64,000 nt of DNA, from the NCBI GenBank assembly GCA_002269645.1, contig NIVC01000373.1, positions 62,001 to 126,000 of the forward strand. Direction: 5' to 3'. Positions 47,720-55,365 of the stretch are shown piece by piece. The notes under the pieces were generated by a model. That model did no database searches and was not told the DNA's origin. It saw only the letters and a list, made by a program, of their open reading frames with translations. The position numbers and the translations under genes were made by a program. The stretch's first letter is position 1. Each line of letters begins with the position of its first letter. The DNA comes from Macrostomum lignano (lineage: Eukaryota).

Positions 47720-48290
47720 GGGAAACCCCGTGCCAGTCAGGGGAATCCCCGGTGGCCAGCGACAGGGATTGCCAGTCAGGGGAGCCCCGGTGGCCAGCGA
47801 CAGGGATTGCCAGTAGGGGAATCCCTGGTGGCCAGCGACAGGGATTGCCAGTCAGGGGAGCCCCGGTGGCCAGCGACAGGGATTGCCAGTAGGGGAATCC
47901 CCGGTGGCCAGCGACAGGGATTGCCAGTCAGGGGAGCCCCGGTGGCCAGCGACAGGGATTGCCAGTCAGGGGAATCCCCGGTGGTCAGCGACAGGGATTG
48001 CCAGTCAGGGGAATCCCCGGTGGCCAGCGACAGGGATTGCAGTCAGGGGAGCCCCTGTGGCCAGCGACAGGGATTGCCGGTCAGGGGAGCCCCGGTGGCC
48101 AGCGACAGGGATTGCCAGTCAGGGGATTCCCCGGTGGCCAGCGGCAGGGATTGCCAGTCAGGGGAATCCTCGGTGACCAGCGGCAGGGAGTTCCAGTCAG
48201 GGGAATCCCCGGTGGCCAGCGGCAGGGAGTTCCAGTCAGGGGAATCCCCGGTGGCCAGCGGCAGGGATTGCCAGTCGGGAATCCCCGGTG
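47720..48290. repeat. 38/39-bp minisatellite (CAGGGATTGCCAGTCAGGGGAATCCCCGGTGGCCAGCGA), about 14 copies
   Basis: Direct tandem unit. Confidence 0.95.
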
Positions 48291-48639: not shown

Positions 48640-48880
48640 AACAGGGGAATCCGCTTTTATAAAACATGGGAAATCCCGCTGCTATGGCACGTGGGAAATC
48701 CCATTGCTATGGAACGTCGGAAATCCCGTTGCTATGGAACGTGGGAATCTTCCGTTGCTATGGAACGTGGGAAATCCCGTTGCTATGGAACGTGGGAATC
48801 TCCCGTTGCTACGGAACGTGGGAAATCCTGTCGCTATAGAACGTGGGAAATCCCGTCGTTATGGAACAGGGGAATCCCCT
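48640..48880. repeat. ~25-bp minisatellite (GTTGCTATGGAACGTGGGAAATCCC)
   Basis: Direct tandem unit, downstream of the MED27 stop. Confidence 0.9.
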
Positions 48881-48929: not shown

Positions 48930-50192
48930 TCAGGCGGCGCACACGGCACTCTTGCAGGCCAGGTGATAGACTGGCCGGTCGTCCTTGCGAAAATCGAACC
49001 AGGTGGGCGGCAGCTGGTCCCGCAGGATGCGGTCGCAGCGGGCGCAGCGCTGCATGAAGAGGTTGCGAAAGGCGCAGAGCCACTTGATGAGCAGCTGCAG
49101 CAGGCTGGTGCCGCCGCCGCTCTGCCTGCCGGCCACCAGCAGCTGCAGCAGGCCGGCCGTCAGCTGGCGGAAACAGCGAAAATGGGAGCTCGGCCAGGCC
49201 TGGTTGGGCCGGGGCAGCGGCTCGCCGAGGCCCAGCACCTGCGGGCAGGGGAGAACCCGAAATGCACATGTATATTGCAGGTATACAGCTGAGCACGAAT
49301 ACGGAGCCAGGGGGGGGGATGGATGGGAAAACTCAAGAGGGGATCAAAGTCTCACCTGAGCCAGGGGGAGCGGGATGAATGGGAAAACTCAACAGGGGAT
49401 CAAAGCCTCACCTGAGCCAGGGGGAGCGGGATGAATGGGAAAACTCAACAGGGGATCAAAGCCTCACCTGAGCCAGGGGGAGCGGGATGGATGGGAAAAC
49501 TCAACAGGGGATCAAAGCCTCACCTGAGCCATCTCAATAACCAGGCCCCTTGTGAACAGCAGCACGTGGAAGCAGTCGGTGGTGACGACGGCCAGATTGG
49601 TGCAGGGCGACGCGGGCTCTACGGAGACGCTGAGCTGGCGGTCCGAGTCGCGGTGGTGCCGTTCGCACTGGGTCCGGTAGCTGCGGCTCAGCTCCCGCTC
49701 CAGGAAGTTCCGCATCTGCTGCGACTGCGTGGCCAATTCACTCTGGCGCCCTCCACCCGACCGGGAGGCGGCGGCGGAGGCGGTGGCAGCGGCGGCGGCC
49801 GGGGCGCGGGCGCGGGCGTGCAGGAGGGCGCGGGTGGCCAGGCCGTCGCGCACCAGGCCGCAGACGTCGGCGCGCCAGCGTTCGCCGAACAACGCCTGGG
49901 TTGTGGCGGCGTGCCGCTCCGGGTCGGCGTCAGCCAGCAGGATGTTGGGGTACAAACTGAGCTGGTCGGGCGGGACCGCCTGCTGGTACTGCTGCCTGGC
50001 AACCAGCGCCATCTTCTCGGCCAGCTGGTCCAGGCTCTGCACGCTCTCGGCCAGCTTGCGGGCGGTGGCGGCCAGCTGCTCGAAGCCGGACGACCCGGAA
50101 CCGTCGCTGGCCGGCTGGTGCAGCTGCAGCAGCTCGCCGCGAAGCTCGCGCACGTGCAGCAGGCTCTGGATGGACAGGTGGCTCAGGCTCTC
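48930..50192 (-). CDS. MED27: Mediator subunit 27; exons about 50192-49524 and 49238-48930; no in-frame genomic ATG found
   Basis: C-terminal AWPSSHFRCFRQLT...KWLCAFRNLFMQRCARCDRILRDQLPPTWFDFR..YHLAC matches the MED27 Zn-binding tail (WL..Y..LF..PC..CG..L...LPPTWRDFR..FH..C). The 5' end is inferred. Confidence 0.85.
49300..49530 (-). repeat. 56-bp tandem repeat containing the MED27 exon/donor junction (4 copies plus a partial)
   Basis: CACCTGAGCC at 49353, 49409, 49465 and 49521 (minus strand GGCTCAG|GTGAG). Confidence 0.95.
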
Positions 50193-50274
50193 CTGCGGGA
50201 TGGCGCACAGATTGCCACACAGTGGGGTTCTGATGCTAATGCTTGGGACTAAGAATGTGCTACATGGGATTCAA

Positions 50275-50845
50275 GATACTGCTGAGATCCCAGGTGAGTG
50301 AGACAGGTATCCTACAGGATGAAGCTGTGAGATACTGCTGAGATCCCAGGTAAGTGGGATAGGTATCCCACAGGATGAAGATGTGAGATACTGCTAAGAT
50401 CCCAGGTAAGTGGGATAGGTATCCTACAGAATGAAGCTGTGAGATACTGCTGAGATCCCAGGTGGGTGGGACAGGTATCCTACAGAATGAAGCTGTGAGA
50501 TACTGCTGAGATCCCAGGTGGGTGGGACAGGTATCCTACATGATGAAGCTGTGAGATACTGCTGAGATCCCAAGTGGGTGGGACAGGTATCCTACAGAAT
50601 GAAGCTGTGAGATACTGCTGAGATCCCAGGTGGGTGGGACAGGTATCCTACATGATAAAGATGTGAGATACTGCTGAGATCCCAGGTGAGTGGGACAGGT
50701 ATCCTACAGGATGAAGATGTGAGATACTGCTGAGATCCCAGGTGAGTGGGACAGGTATCCTACAGGATGAAGATGAGATACTGCTGAGATCCCAGGTGAG
50801 TGGGACAGGTATCCTACAGGATGATGTGAGATACTGCTGAGATCC
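50275..50845. repeat. 56-bp minisatellite, about 10 copies, between TBL3 and MED27
   Basis: GATACTGCTG at 50275, 50331 and onward. Confidence 0.95.
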
Positions 50846-50978
50846 CGGTAGGATCCGGAACAGCGGAGGCCTGAGCCAGACTAAGAGCCCTAAGCTATCT
50901 GCAGAACAAACAAAAGACTTGGCCAAAATTGGACCAGAATTCGCGCCCGAATGAATTCAAATCGGGTCAAAAATGCAG

Positions 50979-50984
50979 TTTATT
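50979..50984 (-). terminator. Poly(A) signal AATAAA of TBL3
   Basis: Plus-strand TTTATT, about 57 nt downstream of the TBL3 stop. Confidence 0.55.
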
Positions 50985-51040
50985 TCATTCGCAGGGTCGC
51001 AACTCATGATAAAAGCAAGCAGGCACAGGTAGTGGCATTC

Positions 51041-54000
51041 TCAGGCAGCGGGGTCAGCAGCCAGCAGGCGGATCAGGTGCCGACACGCTGCCAGCTGCTG
51101 CGCCCGCCTTTCGTGCCGCTCGGTGAAAGCGAGGAGGGCGGGCAGGTGGCGCCGCACGGAGGGCCAGGCCAGCAGCTGCTGCGGCGTCCGCACTAGCAGG
51201 AGGGCGTGCAGGGCGCACTGCGCCTCGTGGCAGGTGCGCGAGTTCGAATTCCAGCCGGCGCTGAACTCCAGCAGGCGCTGCTGCAGCGGCTCGTCCAGGC
51301 CGCGCACGAGCTCCGGGTCCAGGCGGCCGCAGCCGGAGGCCGCCACCAAGTCGGCCACGATGCCGCGCGCCCGCGATGGCTGGGCAAGGCTCAGCGCCAG
51401 GGCGAGGGCCTCGGCGAGGCGGCCGGAACCAAGCAGATTCTGAAGGCGCTGCTCGCGCGCCAAAGCGTCAGCGCGGGCTTCAGCGCGCTCGGCAACGGCC
51501 TCGGCGGTGGCATCTCGCCAAAGCAGCAGCCGGCCGTCCTCGCCGCCGGTGAGCCAGTGACCGCCAGAGCCGCTGGTGCCTTCGTCGGTGGCGTCAGCGG
51601 CCGGGGCGGCGTCTCCTAGCGAGGCGATGCACCAGGCGCGGCCGTTGTGGCCCTCCCGGGTGGCCACCGGGGCGCGGTCCCGCACCGACCAGACGCGAAC
51701 AAGGCCGGACTGCGGGGCGGGGTGGGAGTGGCCGAGGTGACAGGGGCGGAGGTGACGGGCGGAGGCGGATGCAGAGGTGGTGACAGGGGCGGAGGCGGAT
51801 GCAGAGGTGGTGACAGGGGCGGAGGTGGATGCAGAGGTGGTGACAGGGGCGGAGGCGGATGCAGAGGAGGTGACAGGGGCGGAGGTGGATGCAGAGGTGG
51901 TGACAGGGGCGGAGGCGGATGCAGAGGTGGTGACAGGGGCGGAGGTGGATGCAGAGGTGGTGACAGGGGCGGAGGTGGATGCAGAGGTGGTGACAGGGGC
52001 GGAGGCGGATGCAGAGGAGGTGACAGGGGCGGAGGTGGATGCAGAGGTGGTGACAGGGGCGGAGGCGGATGCAGAGGTGGTGACAGGGGCGGAGGTGGAT
52101 GCAGAGGTGGTGACAGGGGCGGAGGTGGATGCAGAGGTGGTGACAGGGGCGGAGGCGGATGCAGAGGAGGTGACAGGGGCGGAGGCGGATGCAGAGGAGG
52201 TGACAGGGGCGGAGGCGGATGCAGAGGTGACAGGGGCGGAGGTGGATGCAGAGGTGGTGACAGGGGCGGAGGTGGATGCAGAGGTGGTGAAAGGAGCGGA
52301 GGTGGCAGGGACGGAGGCGGATGCAGGCGGGTGGCAGGGCGAATATTCAAACACAGGCAGGCTTGGCGACAAGCTGCACCCAAACTCGCACCTGATCCAC
52401 TGTGACAAGGTGCTGTGAGCCCAGCCAGTCGAGGTCGTACAGCGGGTGGTCACCCTGCAGGCAGCGGTGGCAGCTGAGGTCGCGCAAGTCCCAAACTCTG
52501 GCACAGCAGTCGGCGGAGACGCTGGCCAGCAGCTGCTGGTGCCGGCTGAATTTGACGCTCCAGACGCCCCGCTTGTGGCCGGAGAGCCGCCCGATGGGAC
52601 GCAGCTTGGGCAGCGACCAGAGCGACACGGACTTGTCCCGGCTGCCTGCGGCCAGCAGGGTGTCGTTAGGCGACACCGCCAGGCAGTTGACGGCCTTCTC
52701 GTGCGGCCTGGTCACCATGGCAACCACGGTCGGCCCGGAGTCGGTGACGCGGAAGGCTTTGATAACGGGCGTCTCGCAGGCGGAGGCGGCCATATTGCCG
52801 TCGGCAGTAGCGGCCAGGGCGGTCACGTGACCCTCGTGGCCGGGCTCCAGGTCGCCAATGTGGACGGCGCGCACGCCGGCGAGGCTCTGGCCGGCGACCT
52901 CGAGGCGGTGAAGGCGGACCCGGCCGCCCTTGGCAGCGGTGAGAAGGCGGTTGCCGGGCAGCAGCGAGCAGCAGATCAGCGAGTCCAGCTCGCCGTGCAG
53001 CTGCAGGGAACGGCAGCGCCAATCAGCGGAGTCGCCCGGCCGCCACAGGAAGACGCGAAGGAAGGGGCCGGAGTCCGTGGCCAGCAGCAGCCGGGTAGCC
53101 GAGGCATCGCCAATTGGCGGGCCCGCCAGCACGCAGGTGACCTCGCCGAGGGCGCCGCACCACTCGGCCTCGAGGCGGCCGCTGCCACTGTACAGCTCGA
53201 CGGAGCCCGCCTGCCTGGCGACCAGCAGGCCGTCGCCCAGCGTTAGGGCGCACTGCACGCTGCCGGGGGAGTACTCCGCGCTCTCCCCGCCGCCTCCGCC
53301 GCCGCCGCTCTGGCCGCCGTCGCCGCGGCTGAGCTCCAGCAGGCAGCGGCGCCGGCTGCTGCTGAGGTCCCAGAACTTGAGCCGGCCGGACTGGCCGCCA
53401 GTCAGCACCAGCCCGCCGGCGACGGCTCCGAGTCCCAGCGACTCCGCCAGGCCTGCCGGGGCGCGGATGCAGCACTCCAGACTCTCGTCGGTGGGTACCG
53501 TTGCTAGGCGAGAATAATTGCTCAGCTGCCAGACAATTAGCACCTAAAATGCGAGAAATAGCGACCTTGGACTTAAATTTAGCATACTACTCTTATCTAA
53601 TAGGTGTAGAATCCTATCCCTGACACCCTAAAACTGATCCCTGACACCCTAAAACTGATCCCTGACACCCTAACACCTGATCCCTGACACCCTAACACCT
53701 GATCCCTGACACCCTAACACCTGATCCCTGACACCCTGACACCTGATCCCTGACACCCTAACAACTGATCCCTGATACCCTGACACCTGATCCCTGACAC
53801 CCTAACACCTGATCCCTGACACCCTAACACCTGATCCCTGACACCCTAACACCTGATCCCTGACACCCTAACACCTGATCCCTGACATCCTAACACCTGA
53901 TCCCTGACACCCTAACACCTGATCCCTGACACCCTAACACCTGATCCCTGACATCCTAACACCTGATCCCTGACACCCTGACACTTGATCCCTGACACCC

Positions 54001-54721
54001 TAACACCTGATCCCTGACACCCTAACACCTGATCCCTGACATCCTGAAATCCGATCCCGGACACCAAAACCGGCCTCACCTGATCCCTGCCGCTGGTGAC
54101 GGCCCAGCCCTCGTCCATCAGGCACAGGCCGGTGACGGCGCTCTGGTGGCCTTCCAGCGCTCCACTCAGCTCGGCAGAGGTGGCGGACCAAACGCGCACC
54201 CGATAGTCATGCCCGTCAGCTGAGAACAGTTGGCCCGCAGCGAGGCGCAGGAGGCTGAGCAGGCCGGAGTGCCCCCTGCAGGGCCGGGTGTCGCCGTTTC
54301 CCCGATCCCACAGCCGCACGGCGCCGTCCGAGCTGCCACTGGCCAGCCGTCGACCGTCCTCGCTGACGGCCAGCAGGGTGATGGGGCTGCGGTGGAAGCT
54401 GCGCCAGGTGCTGCCTGTCTCGCCAGTCTGCCAGTCCCAGCGGCGCAGCAGCAGCTCCTTGTTGGCCGTGTAGACGGCCGAGTCCGCCGGCGACACCGCG
54501 ACTGCCGTGACCTTCTCCGTCTGGCCGACGAGCTCCCGATGGATGCCGCAGTCTGTGGTGTCCACCACGAACAGCGAGGAGCCGTCCGAGGTGTTGCGCT
54601 GGCAGATGACGTGGCGCCCGTCGTGTCCAGCGTGAATCGCCGACCCCGGCGAGTGGAACGGGCGCAGCTCGGACACCTGACGGAGCTCCACCTCGTCGGG
54701 CGGCGAAGATGCTGAAGTCAT
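51041..54721 (-). CDS. TBL3: Transducin beta-like 3 / UTP13 (WD40 repeats + Utp13 domain), about 820 aa; exons 54721-54080, 53543-52392, 51709-51041
   Basis: Multiple WD40 repeats; HEKAVNCLAVSPNDTLLAAGSRDK and GHKRGVWSVKFS; C-terminal WNSNSRTCHEAQ..LLAFTERHERR (Utp13 domain). All exons are phase 0. Confidence 0.92.
51740..52310. repeat. 30-bp minisatellite (GAGGTGGTGACAGGGGCGGAGGCGGATGCA), about 19 copies, TBL3 intron 2
   Basis: Direct tandem unit; source of the mucin-like and extensin-like spurious ORFs. Confidence 0.96.
53618..54050 (-). repeat. 22-bp minisatellite containing the TBL3 exon 1 donor junction, about 19 copies
   Basis: Minus-strand unit CAGGGATCAGGTGTTAGGGTGT shares CAGGGATCAG|GTG with the real junction at 54080/54079. 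Confidence 0.93.
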
Positions 54722-54733
54722 GCCGGGCTGATG

Positions 54734-54750: not shown

Positions 54751-54814
54751 CCGGCTGCGTATTGTGGCCGCTCCTCTGCCTGCTCAAAGTGTGAAAATCA
54801 GCTGTTGATACTGG

Positions 54815-55365
54815 CTCATAGAGTGGCAATCGGCTACTCCTACCTGCTCATAGAGTGGCAATCGGCTACTCCTACCTGCTCATAGAGTGGCAATCGGCTA
54901 CTCCTACCTGCTCATAGAGTGGTAATCGGCTACTCCTACCTGCTCATAGAGTGGCAATCGGCTACTCCTACCTGCTCATAGAGTGGCAATCGGCTACTCC
55001 TACCTGCTCATAGAGTGGCAATCGGCTACTCCTACCTGCTCATAGAGTGGCAATCGGCTACTCCTACCTGCTCATGGAGTGGCAATCGGCTACTTCTACC
55101 TGCTCATAGAGTGACAATCGGCTACTCCTACCTGCTCATAGAGTGACAATCAGCTACTCCTACCTGCTCATGGAGTGACAATAGGCTACTCCTACCTGCT
55201 CATAGAGTGACAATCGGCTACTCCTACCTGCTCATAGAGTGACAATCAGCTACTCCTACCTGCTCATAGAGTGAAAATCGGCTACTCCTACCTGCTCATA
55301 GAGTGACAATCAGCTACTCCTACCTGCTCATAGTGACAATAGGCTACTCCTACCTGCTCATAGAA
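54815..55365. repeat. 32-bp minisatellite (CTCATAGAGTGGCAATCGGCTACTCCTACCTG), about 17 copies, between CDK5 and TBL3
   Basis: CTCATA at 54815, 54847 and onward. Confidence 0.96.

What the first reader, a model, noticed from the sequence alone, without database searches (positions are those of the whole stretch)
50150..50235. MED27 has no genomic start codon: candidate for a spliced-leader-donated AUG
The MED27 frame is open to about 50270 without an ATG, and no ATG-bearing exon was found in the ~800 bp up to the TBL3 stop. A typical acceptor CATCCCGCAG| (AG at 50194-50193) is followed exactly in frame by GAG AGC CTG, where homology to MED27 N-termini begins. Flatworm spliced leaders end in a conserved AUG that can act as initiator Met, so trans-splicing would give M-ESLSHLSIQSLLHVRELR and a ~326-aa protein of normal size. 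An essential gene would then depend on trans-splicing for its start codon. The taxon and SL use are inferred.
Basis: partly seen in the sequence, partly recalled or inferred. Interest (0 to 1): 0.75.

Follow-up and report, generated by a model that had tools for sequence, protein, structure and literature searches.

The report
MED27 start codon from spliced leader
In the flatworm Macrostomum lignano the MED27 gene has no start codon of its own for its first 60 codons and almost certainly borrows the AUG at the end of the trans-spliced leader RNA, a mechanism already documented in flatworms since 2006, so this is a clean new example rather than a new phenomenon.

Summary
The window is Macrostomum lignano assembly Mlig_3_7, scaffold NIVC01000373.1. 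On the minus strand the MED27 frame is closed by TGA at 50273-50271. It has no in-frame ATG until 50012-50010 (codon 61). A CCCGCAG| acceptor (AG 50194-50193) abuts GAG at 50192.

The 60 ATG-less codons are coding: GC3 is 0.97 against 0.62 upstream. They form the N-terminal helices that align, in register, with MED27 orthologues and human MED27.

The published M. lignano spliced leader ends in ...TTGCATG. Trans-splicing at 50192 would therefore give M-ESLSHLS..., 326 aa.

GenBank annotates this CDS as a 5'-partial protein of 325 aa starting exactly at 50192. That annotation set 5' boundaries by cutting transcriptional units at peaks of SL-containing reads. TBL3 and MED27 share one transcriptional-unit name, and CDK5 does too on a paralogous scaffold. 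MED27 is thus a downstream gene of an operon-like unit.

I saw no SL-junction read directly.

SL-donated initiator AUGs are established for flatworms (Cheng et al. 2006) and noted for Macrostomum (2023).

The parts
51041..54733 (-). TBL3/UTP13 CDS (BOX15_Mlig032149g5, 824 aa, '5' partial'), the gene upstream of MED27 in the same transcriptional unit. Its CDS also starts directly after an AG acceptor (ttttatgcag|CATCAGCCCGGCATG).
50979..50984 (-). AATAAA poly(A) signal of TBL3, about 57 nt after its stop codon
   Evidence: read directly from the sequence
50274..50846 (.). Tandem array, 56 bp x 10.3 copies. It fills two thirds of the 848-nt TBL3-MED27 spacer (the outron).
50271..50273 (-). TGA, the first in-frame stop upstream of the MED27 exon. 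It closes the frame 26 codons before the acceptor.
50193..50204 (-). 3' splice acceptor GCCATCCCGCAG (AG at 50194-50193), inferred to be the SL trans-splice site
   Evidence: the acceptor is conserved in paralogue L003
50013..50192 (-). The first 60 MED27 codons (ESLSHLSIQSLLHVRELRGELLQL...AEK), with no ATG. GC3 is 0.97. The AlphaFold2 model puts residues 2-29 and 37-70 (numbered from E1, so helix 2 runs past this stretch into residues 61-70) in two helices.
50010..50012 (-). The first genomic in-frame ATG (residue 61 of the exon; context GAGAAGATGG). It is the only candidate internal start.
49524..50192 (-). MED27 exon 1 (223 codons), donor CTCAG|GTGAGG
49239..49523 (-). MED27 intron 1 (285 nt). 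It lies largely within a 56-bp x 4.1 tandem repeat that copies the donor site.
48930..49238 (-). MED27 exon 2 (102 codons plus TGA). It carries the Pfam Med27 domain and the CxxC...H..C motif.

Best explanation
MED27 of Macrostomum lignano is the downstream gene of an operon-like transcriptional unit: TBL3 then MED27, and CDK5-TBL3-MED27 on one paralogous scaffold. The pre-mRNA is cut and polyadenylated after TBL3. The 35-nt spliced leader is then trans-spliced to the acceptor CCCGCAG| at 50194-50193. The leader ends in AUG, so the junction reads ...UUGCAUG|GAGAGCCUG, and the leader's last three bases become codon 1 of MED27. Translation yields M-ESLSHLSIQS..., 326 aa, a full-length Mediator subunit 27.

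Shown here:
- the genomic anatomy;
- the coding nature and MED27-like architecture of the ATG-less 60 codons;
- the identity of the organism;
- the exact start of the deposited 5'-partial CDS;
- the shared transcriptional-unit names.

Taken from the literature:
- the leader sequence;
- the way the annotation set its boundaries;
- the use of the SL AUG as initiator in flatworms.

Inferred:
- that SL reads sit at 50192;
- that ribosomes initiate at the SL AUG on this mRNA.
For: 1. The window is identical to NIVC01000373.1 of M. lignano.
2. The published leader ends in ATG. 30% of the species' genes are trans-spliced and 15% lie in operons. Repeats commonly inflate operon spacers (PMC8629364).
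3. The GenBank CDS BOX15_Mlig032149g6 is 'partial', is 325 aa long and starts at exactly 50192, directly after AG. A TransDecoder 5'-partial ORF starts at the transcript's 5' end. Inside transcriptional units that end was set by SL-read peaks (PMC5730564). The boundary lies 81 nt past the end of the tandem array, so it is not a mapping drop-out at the repeat.
4. TBL3 is Mlig032149g5 and MED27 is g6 on this scaffold. CDK5, TBL3 and MED27 are g2, g3 and g4 on NIVC01000195.1. Names share a prefix only within one transcriptional-unit cluster.
5. 50192 is the first AG in the scanned stretch (50330-50100), reading downstream, at which an SL-AUG ORF runs on into MED27.
6. GC3 is 0.97 in the 60 ATG-less codons, 0.90-0.91 in the rest of the CDS and 0.62 in the 78 nt upstream.
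7. Orthologues of 300-350 aa align so that their Met falls 1-12 residues before E1. A phmmer match to a 302-aa orthologue covers query 11-318 against 10-300. The hhalign N-terminal match is in register, E 0.085. The AlphaFold2 model has helices at 2-29 and 37-70. Foldseek aligns human MED27 over 321-325 columns of the 325-residue query, E 1.5e-11.
8. Precedent: the SL AUG is in frame in 28% of S. mansoni trans-spliced cDNAs and more than 40 require it (Cheng et al. 2006, as cited in PMC9851317). The SL ATG is noted as a start codon in Macrostomum (PMC10468722).
Against: - No RNA read, cDNA or peptide spanning the SL-MED27 junction was seen here.
- The exact protein M-ESLSH...CAA is absent from the 15-billion-protein collection.
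- The acceptor CCGCAG misses the commonest trans-splice motif [T/C]TNCAG by one base, though only 44% of sites carry that motif.
- The SL AUG has U at -3, while the internal ATG at 50012 has a strong context (A at -3, G at +4). Some leaky scanning to Met61 is therefore possible.
- The 'partial' flag alone is not diagnostic. CDK5 g6 is 'partial' merely because its ORF stays open upstream of its real ATG.
- Sequence-only homology of the N-terminus is marginal.
Confidence: 0.85

Rival explanations
1. Translation starts only at the first genomic ATG (50012-50010), giving a 265-aa MED27 that lacks the first 60 residues. The stretch 50192-50013 would be 5'UTR.
For: This ATG has a strong initiation context, GAGAAGATGG. 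The SL AUG has a weaker context, U at -3 (leader sequence).
Against: - The 60 codons show GC3 of 0.97 and three-base periodicity with P 2e-10, as in the rest of the CDS.
- They form the two N-terminal helices and align in register with orthologue N-termini and human MED27.
- On a trans-spliced mRNA the SL AUG is the first AUG, it is in frame, and no stop follows it.
- A 265-aa product would be 40-60 aa shorter at the N-terminus than every full-length orthologue.
Confidence: 0.07
2. A cis-spliced upstream exon supplies the ATG, either within the spacer or further upstream.
For: One ATG, at 51038, has an in-phase GT at 51026. Spliced to 50192 it would give MPLP-ESLSH.
Against: - That ATG sits 3 nt after the TBL3 stop codon, inside TBL3's 3'UTR and upstream of its AATAAA.
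- Its donor, CCT|GTGCCT, is far from the species' GT[G/A]AG consensus.
- The other five ATGs open ORFs of 1-16 codons with no in-phase donor.
- The deposited read-based model has no upstream exon, and its ORF runs to the transcript's 5' end at 50192.
Confidence: 0.03
3. The gene uses non-AUG initiation on an unspliced or differently spliced mRNA (for example CUG at 50222 or 50210). Alternatively it is made as a TBL3-MED27 fusion, as in the old UniProt model A0A1I8FAL8.
For: The six codons before the acceptor (CTG TGC GCC ATC CCG CAG) all end in G or C. An ab initio model on the ML2 assembly joined TBL3 to ...TPLCGNLCAIPQESL.
Against: - Six codons is within chance, and they double as the pyrimidine-rich acceptor tract.
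- GC3 falls to 5 of 10 in each of the two 10-codon windows further upstream.
- The fusion model comes from a frameshift-ridden assembly, uses the donor GC|GTGTCG and drops the TBL3 C-terminus.
- The later read-based annotation separates the two genes.
Confidence: 0.03
4. An assembly error or a pseudogene: the real ATG was lost in the assembly, or this copy is dead.
For: Mlig_3_7 is redundant and built from PacBio reads. Copy L003 carries a 1-bp deletion that breaks the frame further downstream.
Against: - L001 and L002 are 100% identical over the whole spacer and exon start.
- L003, at 96% identity, keeps the same acceptor and lacks an ATG. It has one synonymous change in the first 60 codons, against two changes in about 110 nt upstream.
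- The independent ML2-based model reads the same.
- The ORF of this copy is intact through to its stop codon.
Confidence: 0.02

Closest known systems
[quoted passage not shown]
   Same: The leader ends in AUG. The acceptor places that AUG in frame with an ORF that has no start codon of its own, so the N-terminal Met is encoded by the SL RNA gene and not by the protein's locus.
   Different: The species (a free-living macrostomid) and the gene (Mediator subunit 27) differ. No experiment on this mRNA exists. Here the evidence is genomic anatomy plus a read-derived annotation.
SL-resolved operons of M. lignano (Wudarski et al. 2017; Ustyantsev and Berezikov 2021)
   Same: Neighbouring genes on the same strand share one transcriptional-unit name. 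The downstream gene starts at an AG acceptor. The spacer is under 1 kb and mostly tandem repeat, as those authors describe for operon spacers.
   Different: The raw spacer (848 nt) is long compared with the roughly 100-nt mode they report. It shrinks to about 275 nt only after the 56-bp array is subtracted. I could not see whether MED27 also has a promoter of its own.
slORFs: ORFs created by start codons inside spliced leaders in nematodes, Oikopleura and trypanosomes (slORFfinder, 2023)
   Same: The start codon is supplied in trans by the leader.
   Different: Those are mostly near-cognate NUG codons creating alternative or extended ORFs. Here a canonical AUG supplies the only start for the main, conserved ORF.
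Human and mouse MED27 in solved Mediator structures (7EMF, 7LBM, 6W1S)
   Same: The C-terminal domain matches by sequence (E 8e-9, query 197-318 against 187-309). The whole length matches by fold (Foldseek E 1.5e-11 over 321-325 columns). The size is similar, 326 against 311 aa.
   Different: About 17-18% identity in the Foldseek alignments to human MED27. There is an Ala/Pro-rich insertion at residues about 129-149. The vertebrate genes encode their own ATG.

Membership tests
SL-AUG-initiated flatworm mRNAs (Cheng et al. 2006) | The organism has an SL RNA whose exon ends in AUG | tested here: met
   The window is M. lignano Mlig_3_7. The published 35-nt leader ends ...TTGCATG (PMC8629364). 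No SL RNA gene lies in this window, so the leader sequence comes from the literature.
SL-AUG-initiated flatworm mRNAs (Cheng et al. 2006) | The mRNA is SL trans-spliced at the acceptor directly before the ORF | tested here: inconclusive
   The evidence is indirect but strong. The deposited 5'-partial CDS starts exactly at AG|GAG, in an annotation whose internal 5' boundaries come from SL-read peaks. TBL3 and MED27 share a transcriptional-unit name. No SL-junction read was available to me.
SL-AUG-initiated flatworm mRNAs (Cheng et al. 2006) | The SL AUG is in frame with the ORF, with no intervening stop | tested here: met
   ATG|GAG AGC CTG... stays open for all 325 codons across the one intron.
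SL-AUG-initiated flatworm mRNAs (Cheng et al. 2006) | There is no usable genomic AUG at the N-terminus, and the ATG-less stretch is truly coding | tested here: met
   The first in-frame ATG is codon 61. GC3 is 0.97 with periodicity P 2e-10. The N-terminal helices align with orthologues and human MED27.
SL-AUG-initiated flatworm mRNAs (Cheng et al. 2006) | Translation demonstrably starts at the SL AUG | not testable with these tools
   This needs ribosome profiling, N-terminal proteomics or a reporter assay.
Mediator subunit 27 (Pfam PF11571) | C-terminal Med27 domain with the conserved C-x2-C ... H-x2-C motif | tested here: met
   Pfam E 2.3e-13, 50.7 bits against a cut-off of 25. C288, C291, H315 and C318 are invariant in the 22-sequence alignment. 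PDB MED27 hits reach E 8e-9.
Mediator subunit 27 (Pfam PF11571) | Full-length architecture: N-terminal helical hairpin plus C-terminal alpha/beta domain | tested here: met
   The AlphaFold2 model has pLDDT 71.8. Foldseek matches 7lbm_n and 7emf_0 over 321-325 columns, E 1.5e-11 and 9.4e-11.
M. lignano operon (criteria of Ustyantsev and Berezikov 2021) | Adjacent genes on the same strand, downstream gene SL trans-spliced, repeat-adjusted spacer under 1 kb | tested here: met
   Both genes are on the same strand. The spacer is 848 nt, of which 573 nt is a tandem array. The transcriptional-unit prefix is shared. The trans-splicing status itself is indirect, as noted above.

The most novel reading that the evidence does not exclude
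Because the SL AUG sits in a weak context and Met61 in a strong one, trans-spliced MED27 mRNA might yield two isoforms by leaky scanning. One would be full length. The other would be a 265-aa form lacking helix 1 and most of helix 2, the N-terminal helices of the protein. The ratio could depend on how the trimethylguanosine-capped leader is read. In any case an essential Mediator subunit would be obligatorily coupled to SL trans-splicing, which in this species is enriched in stem-cell (neoblast) genes.
Probability: 0.12. Interest if true: 0.4.

Novelty: new member of a known kind. Interest (0 to 1): 0.25.

Why it matters
It matters on three counts.

1. Annotation. The GenBank protein (PAA84467.1 / PAA82563.1) is labelled 'partial', yet it is in all likelihood complete apart from a Met encoded elsewhere in the genome. 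Pipelines that trim the leader, ATG included, will systematically produce such 'partial' models. They may also mis-start them at internal Mets.

2. Biology. This is a clean case in which a conserved, presumably essential transcription co-factor cannot be translated in full without trans-splicing. That gives the conserved flatworm SL AUG a concrete job.

3. Experiments. M. lignano has transgenesis, so the MED27 5' region would make a compact reporter for SL-AUG-dependent translation.

None of this changes current understanding of the mechanism.

Tried and rejected
- Exact look-up of M-ESLSH...CAA (326 aa) and of the Met61-initiated 265-aa form, in two allelic versions: none is in the protein collection. 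No transcript-derived protein could settle the start.
- Word-indexed homology searches with the N-terminal 125 aa and with a TBL3 fragment returned nothing, not even self. I recovered the names by rebuilding the spliced TBL3 and CDK5 proteins and looking them up exactly.
- Search for the SL sequence in the window: no match with up to 3 mismatches.
- Literature search for Mlig032149 (no paper holds it), and a search of the supplements of Grudniewska et al. 2018 for Mlig032149 or MED27: nothing. The Ustyantsev paper has no supplements held as text.
- The orthologue closest over its full length (P0027, GCA_001856785.1) has an ordinary genomic ATG not preceded by AG, and its taxon is unknown. It is uninformative for the question of whether flatworm orthologues also lack the ATG.
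- L001 against L002 as independent evidence: rejected. They are 100% identical across the spacer, so they are redundant copies.
- phmmer against the PDB aligned only the C-terminal domain. N-terminal homology had to be tested by profile and by fold.

Full report
**Where the window comes from**

A look-up of the 325-aa protein encoded at the finding returned two loci of assembly GCA_002269645.1 (Macrostomum lignano, Mlig_3_7). One of them, L002 (scaffold NIVC01000373.1), is 100% identical to window 38930-60192 on the minus strand over 21,263 nt.

**The observation**

All features lie on the minus strand.
- TBL3/UTP13 ends with TGA at 51043-51041 and has an AATAAA at 50984-50979.
- A 56-bp tandem array of 10.3 copies follows, at 50846-50274.
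- Then come 81 nt of unique sequence ending in GCCATCCCGCAG, with the AG at 50194-50193.
- The MED27 frame then starts: GAG AGC CTG at 50192.
- That frame is closed upstream by TGA at 50273-50271. It has no in-frame ATG until 50012-50010, which is codon 61.
- The 848-nt spacer holds six ATGs on this strand. Five open ORFs of 1-16 codons with no in-phase GT.
- The sixth lies 3 nt after the TBL3 stop, within TBL3's 3'UTR. Its only in-phase donor, CCT|GTGCCT, is poor.
- Among the AG dinucleotides between 50330 and 50100, 50192 is the first exon start, reading downstream, at which an added ATG opens a frame that runs on into MED27.
- The gene has two exons, 50192-49524 and 49238-48930. It encodes 325 residues with a Pfam Med27 domain (E 2.3e-13).

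**Are the 60 ATG-less codons really coding?**

If they were 5'UTR, the gene would simply start at Met61 and there would be nothing to explain. Four lines of evidence say they are coding.

1. Codon-position composition. G+C at positions 1/2/3 is 0.75/0.42/0.97 in these 60 codons, against 0.71/0.53/0.90 and 0.68/0.50/0.91 in the rest of the CDS. The 78 nt of open frame upstream of the acceptor give 0.38/0.58/0.62. The periodicity has chi-square P 2e-10.
2. Size and register. A full HMMER scan of 1.8 billion representatives found 46 MED27 relatives. Full-length ones are 300-350 aa. One 302-aa protein aligns 10-300 against query 11-318. In a 22-sequence alignment the orthologues' initiator Met lies 1-12 residues before the position of E1. 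The conserved N-terminal pattern (..AL....LR..V..VF..L.DG) matches SLLHVRELRGELLQLHQPASDG. A profile-sequence comparison restricted to the N-terminal 128 residues gives a match in register (profile 13-41 against query 8-36), but only E 0.085. Sequence alone is therefore marginal.
3. Structure. The AlphaFold2 model (pLDDT 71.8) has helices at 2-29 and 37-70. Foldseek aligns human MED27 chains 7lbm_n and 7emf_0 over 321-325 columns of the 325-residue query, at E 1.5e-11 and 9.4e-11. A protein starting at Met61 would lack helix 1 and most of helix 2.
4. Paralogue comparison. In L003 (NIVC01000195.1, about 96% identical) the first 60 codons carry one change, which is synonymous. The roughly 110 nt upstream carry two. 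The acceptor is intact and no ATG appears.

**Where the AUG comes from**

The single 35-nt spliced leader of M. lignano is CGGTCTCTTACTGCGAAGACTCAATTTATTGCATG. About 30% of genes receive it and 15% lie in operons. Repeats commonly inflate operon spacers (PMC8629364). Joining the leader to 50192 gives ...TTGCATG|GAGAGC, that is Met-Glu-Ser-Leu..., 326 aa.

Direct RNA reads were not available to me, but the deposited annotation encodes their result.
- GenBank proteins PAA84467.1 and PAA82563.1 (BOX15_Mlig032149g6) are flagged 'partial'. They are 325 aa long and start with ESLSH. The CDS begins at exactly 50192.
- In that annotation, RNA-seq 'transcriptional units' were cut into genes by the TBONE pipeline, using only peaks of SL-containing reads (leader trimmed) and poly(A) reads. 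ORFs were then called with TransDecoder (PMC5730564).
- A 5'-partial ORF starts at the transcript's first codon, so the transcript's 5' end is the AG| junction.
- That end lies 81 nt beyond the tandem array, so it is not a coverage drop-out at the repeat.
- Trimming the whole leader, ATG included, is what turns an SL-initiated protein into a 'partial' one.

**Operon context**

I rebuilt the spliced TBL3 and CDK5 proteins and looked them up by exact sequence.
- TBL3 is BOX15_Mlig032149g5 on this scaffold, g3 on NIVC01000195.1 and g7 on NIVC01000462.1. MED27 is g6 and g4.
- CDK5 is Mlig032149g2 on NIVC01000195.1, but Mlig001509g6 and g8 on the other two scaffolds.
- The prefix names a cluster of transcriptional units. 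Unrelated genes share it only if they were assembled on one precursor RNA.
- TBL3's CDS also begins straight after an acceptor (ttttatgcag|CAT CAG CCC GGC ATG), again with the SL AUG in frame.
- Both spacers hold a tandem array of about 550 bp: 32 bp x 17 at 54814-55364 and 56 bp x 10 at 50274-50846. Without the array the TBL3-MED27 spacer is about 275 nt, inside the published operon criterion.

As a downstream cistron, MED27 needs the leader for its cap as well as for its AUG.

**Rival explanations**

- Initiation only at Met61 has the better Kozak context (GAGAAGATGG, against U at -3 for the SL AUG). It is contradicted by the coding signature, the fold and the protein size. Some leaky scanning cannot be excluded.
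- A cis exon with an ATG is contradicted by the ATG inventory and by the read-based gene model.
- Non-AUG initiation, or a TBL3-MED27 fusion, has only one source: an ab initio model on the frameshift-ridden ML2 assembly (P0002).
- Assembly error is contradicted by three copies and two assemblies that agree.
- The 'partial' flag by itself proves nothing. CDK5 g6 is 'partial' only because its frame stays open upstream of its true [13 protein letters not shown] start.

**Comparison with what is known**

All reported flatworm leaders end in AUG, and its use as initiator Met was shown in Schistosoma mansoni (Cheng et al. 2006). [quoted passage not shown] Tapeworm and schistosome genome papers repeat the point. 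[quoted passage not shown]

I found no paper naming MED27 or Mlig032149. The finding is a correct, well-reasoned reading of raw sequence and a new, clean instance of a known mechanism. It is not a new mechanism.

**Verdict**

- Observation: confirmed.
- Interpretation: supported, with confidence 0.85 that the SL supplies the initiator codon.
- Novelty: new member of a known kind.
- Interest: 0.25.
- Decisive test: look for the junction ...TTATTGCATG|GAGAGCCTGAGCC in the public RNA-seq, and for the peptide MESLSHLSIQSLLHVR.

Noticed in passing
window 54733-54715 (minus strand): The TBL3/UTP13 CDS also begins directly after an AG acceptor (ttttatgcag|CAT CAG CCC GGC ATG). The SL AUG would be in frame five codons before TBL3's own ATG, so TBL3 may carry an SL-encoded MHQPG extension.
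   Followed up: partly
window 58284-48930 (minus strand); L003 (NIVC01000195.1): CDK5, TBL3 and MED27 lie head to tail. On the paralogous scaffold they are named Mlig032149 g2, g3 and g4, one transcriptional-unit cluster. That suggests an operon of three or more genes. On this scaffold CDK5 carries another prefix (Mlig001509g6).
   Followed up: partly
window 54814-55364 and 50274-50846: Each of the two intergenic spacers of the cluster holds one tandem array of about 550 bp (32 bp x 17.3; 56 bp x 10.3). On the + strand every 56-bp unit contains CAG|GTGAGT, a perfect 5' splice-site consensus on the non-gene strand.
   Followed up: no
window 49304-49531: A 56-bp x 4.1 tandem repeat straddles the MED27 exon 1 / intron 1 boundary and copies the donor CTGGCTCAG|GTGAGG four times. 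Only the first copy keeps the frame, because 56 is not a multiple of 3.
   Followed up: no
window 51757-52305: A 30-bp x 18.4 tandem array sits inside a TBL3 intron. It is open in several frames, which produces long spurious ORFs of Ser/Ala/Thr/Pro- and Gly-rich repeats.
   Followed up: no
L003 about 5900 (NIVC01000195.1), equivalent to window about 49810: The third MED27 copy has a 1-bp deletion in the GC-rich Ala stretch (cgcg-ccgcgcc). It shifts the frame, and GenBank therefore annotates only a 166-aa protein from MRNFLER (BOX15_Mlig032149g4). It is either a PacBio indel error or a decaying homeologue.
   Followed up: partly
window 51090-50229 (minus strand): UniProt A0A1I8FAL8 (from the older ML2 assembly) is a predicted TBL3-MED27 fusion, joining donor GC|GTGTCG in the last TBL3 exon to acceptor atcag|A at 50229. 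It is most likely an ab initio artefact caused by the missing MED27 ATG.
   Followed up: partly
window 48000-48290 and 48663-48878: More tandem arrays lie just downstream of MED27 (39 bp x 7.6; 25 bp x 8.6, in or near its 3'UTR). The whole window alternates between GC-rich exons (GC3 about 0.9) and repeat-rich, AT-richer non-coding DNA.
   Followed up: no
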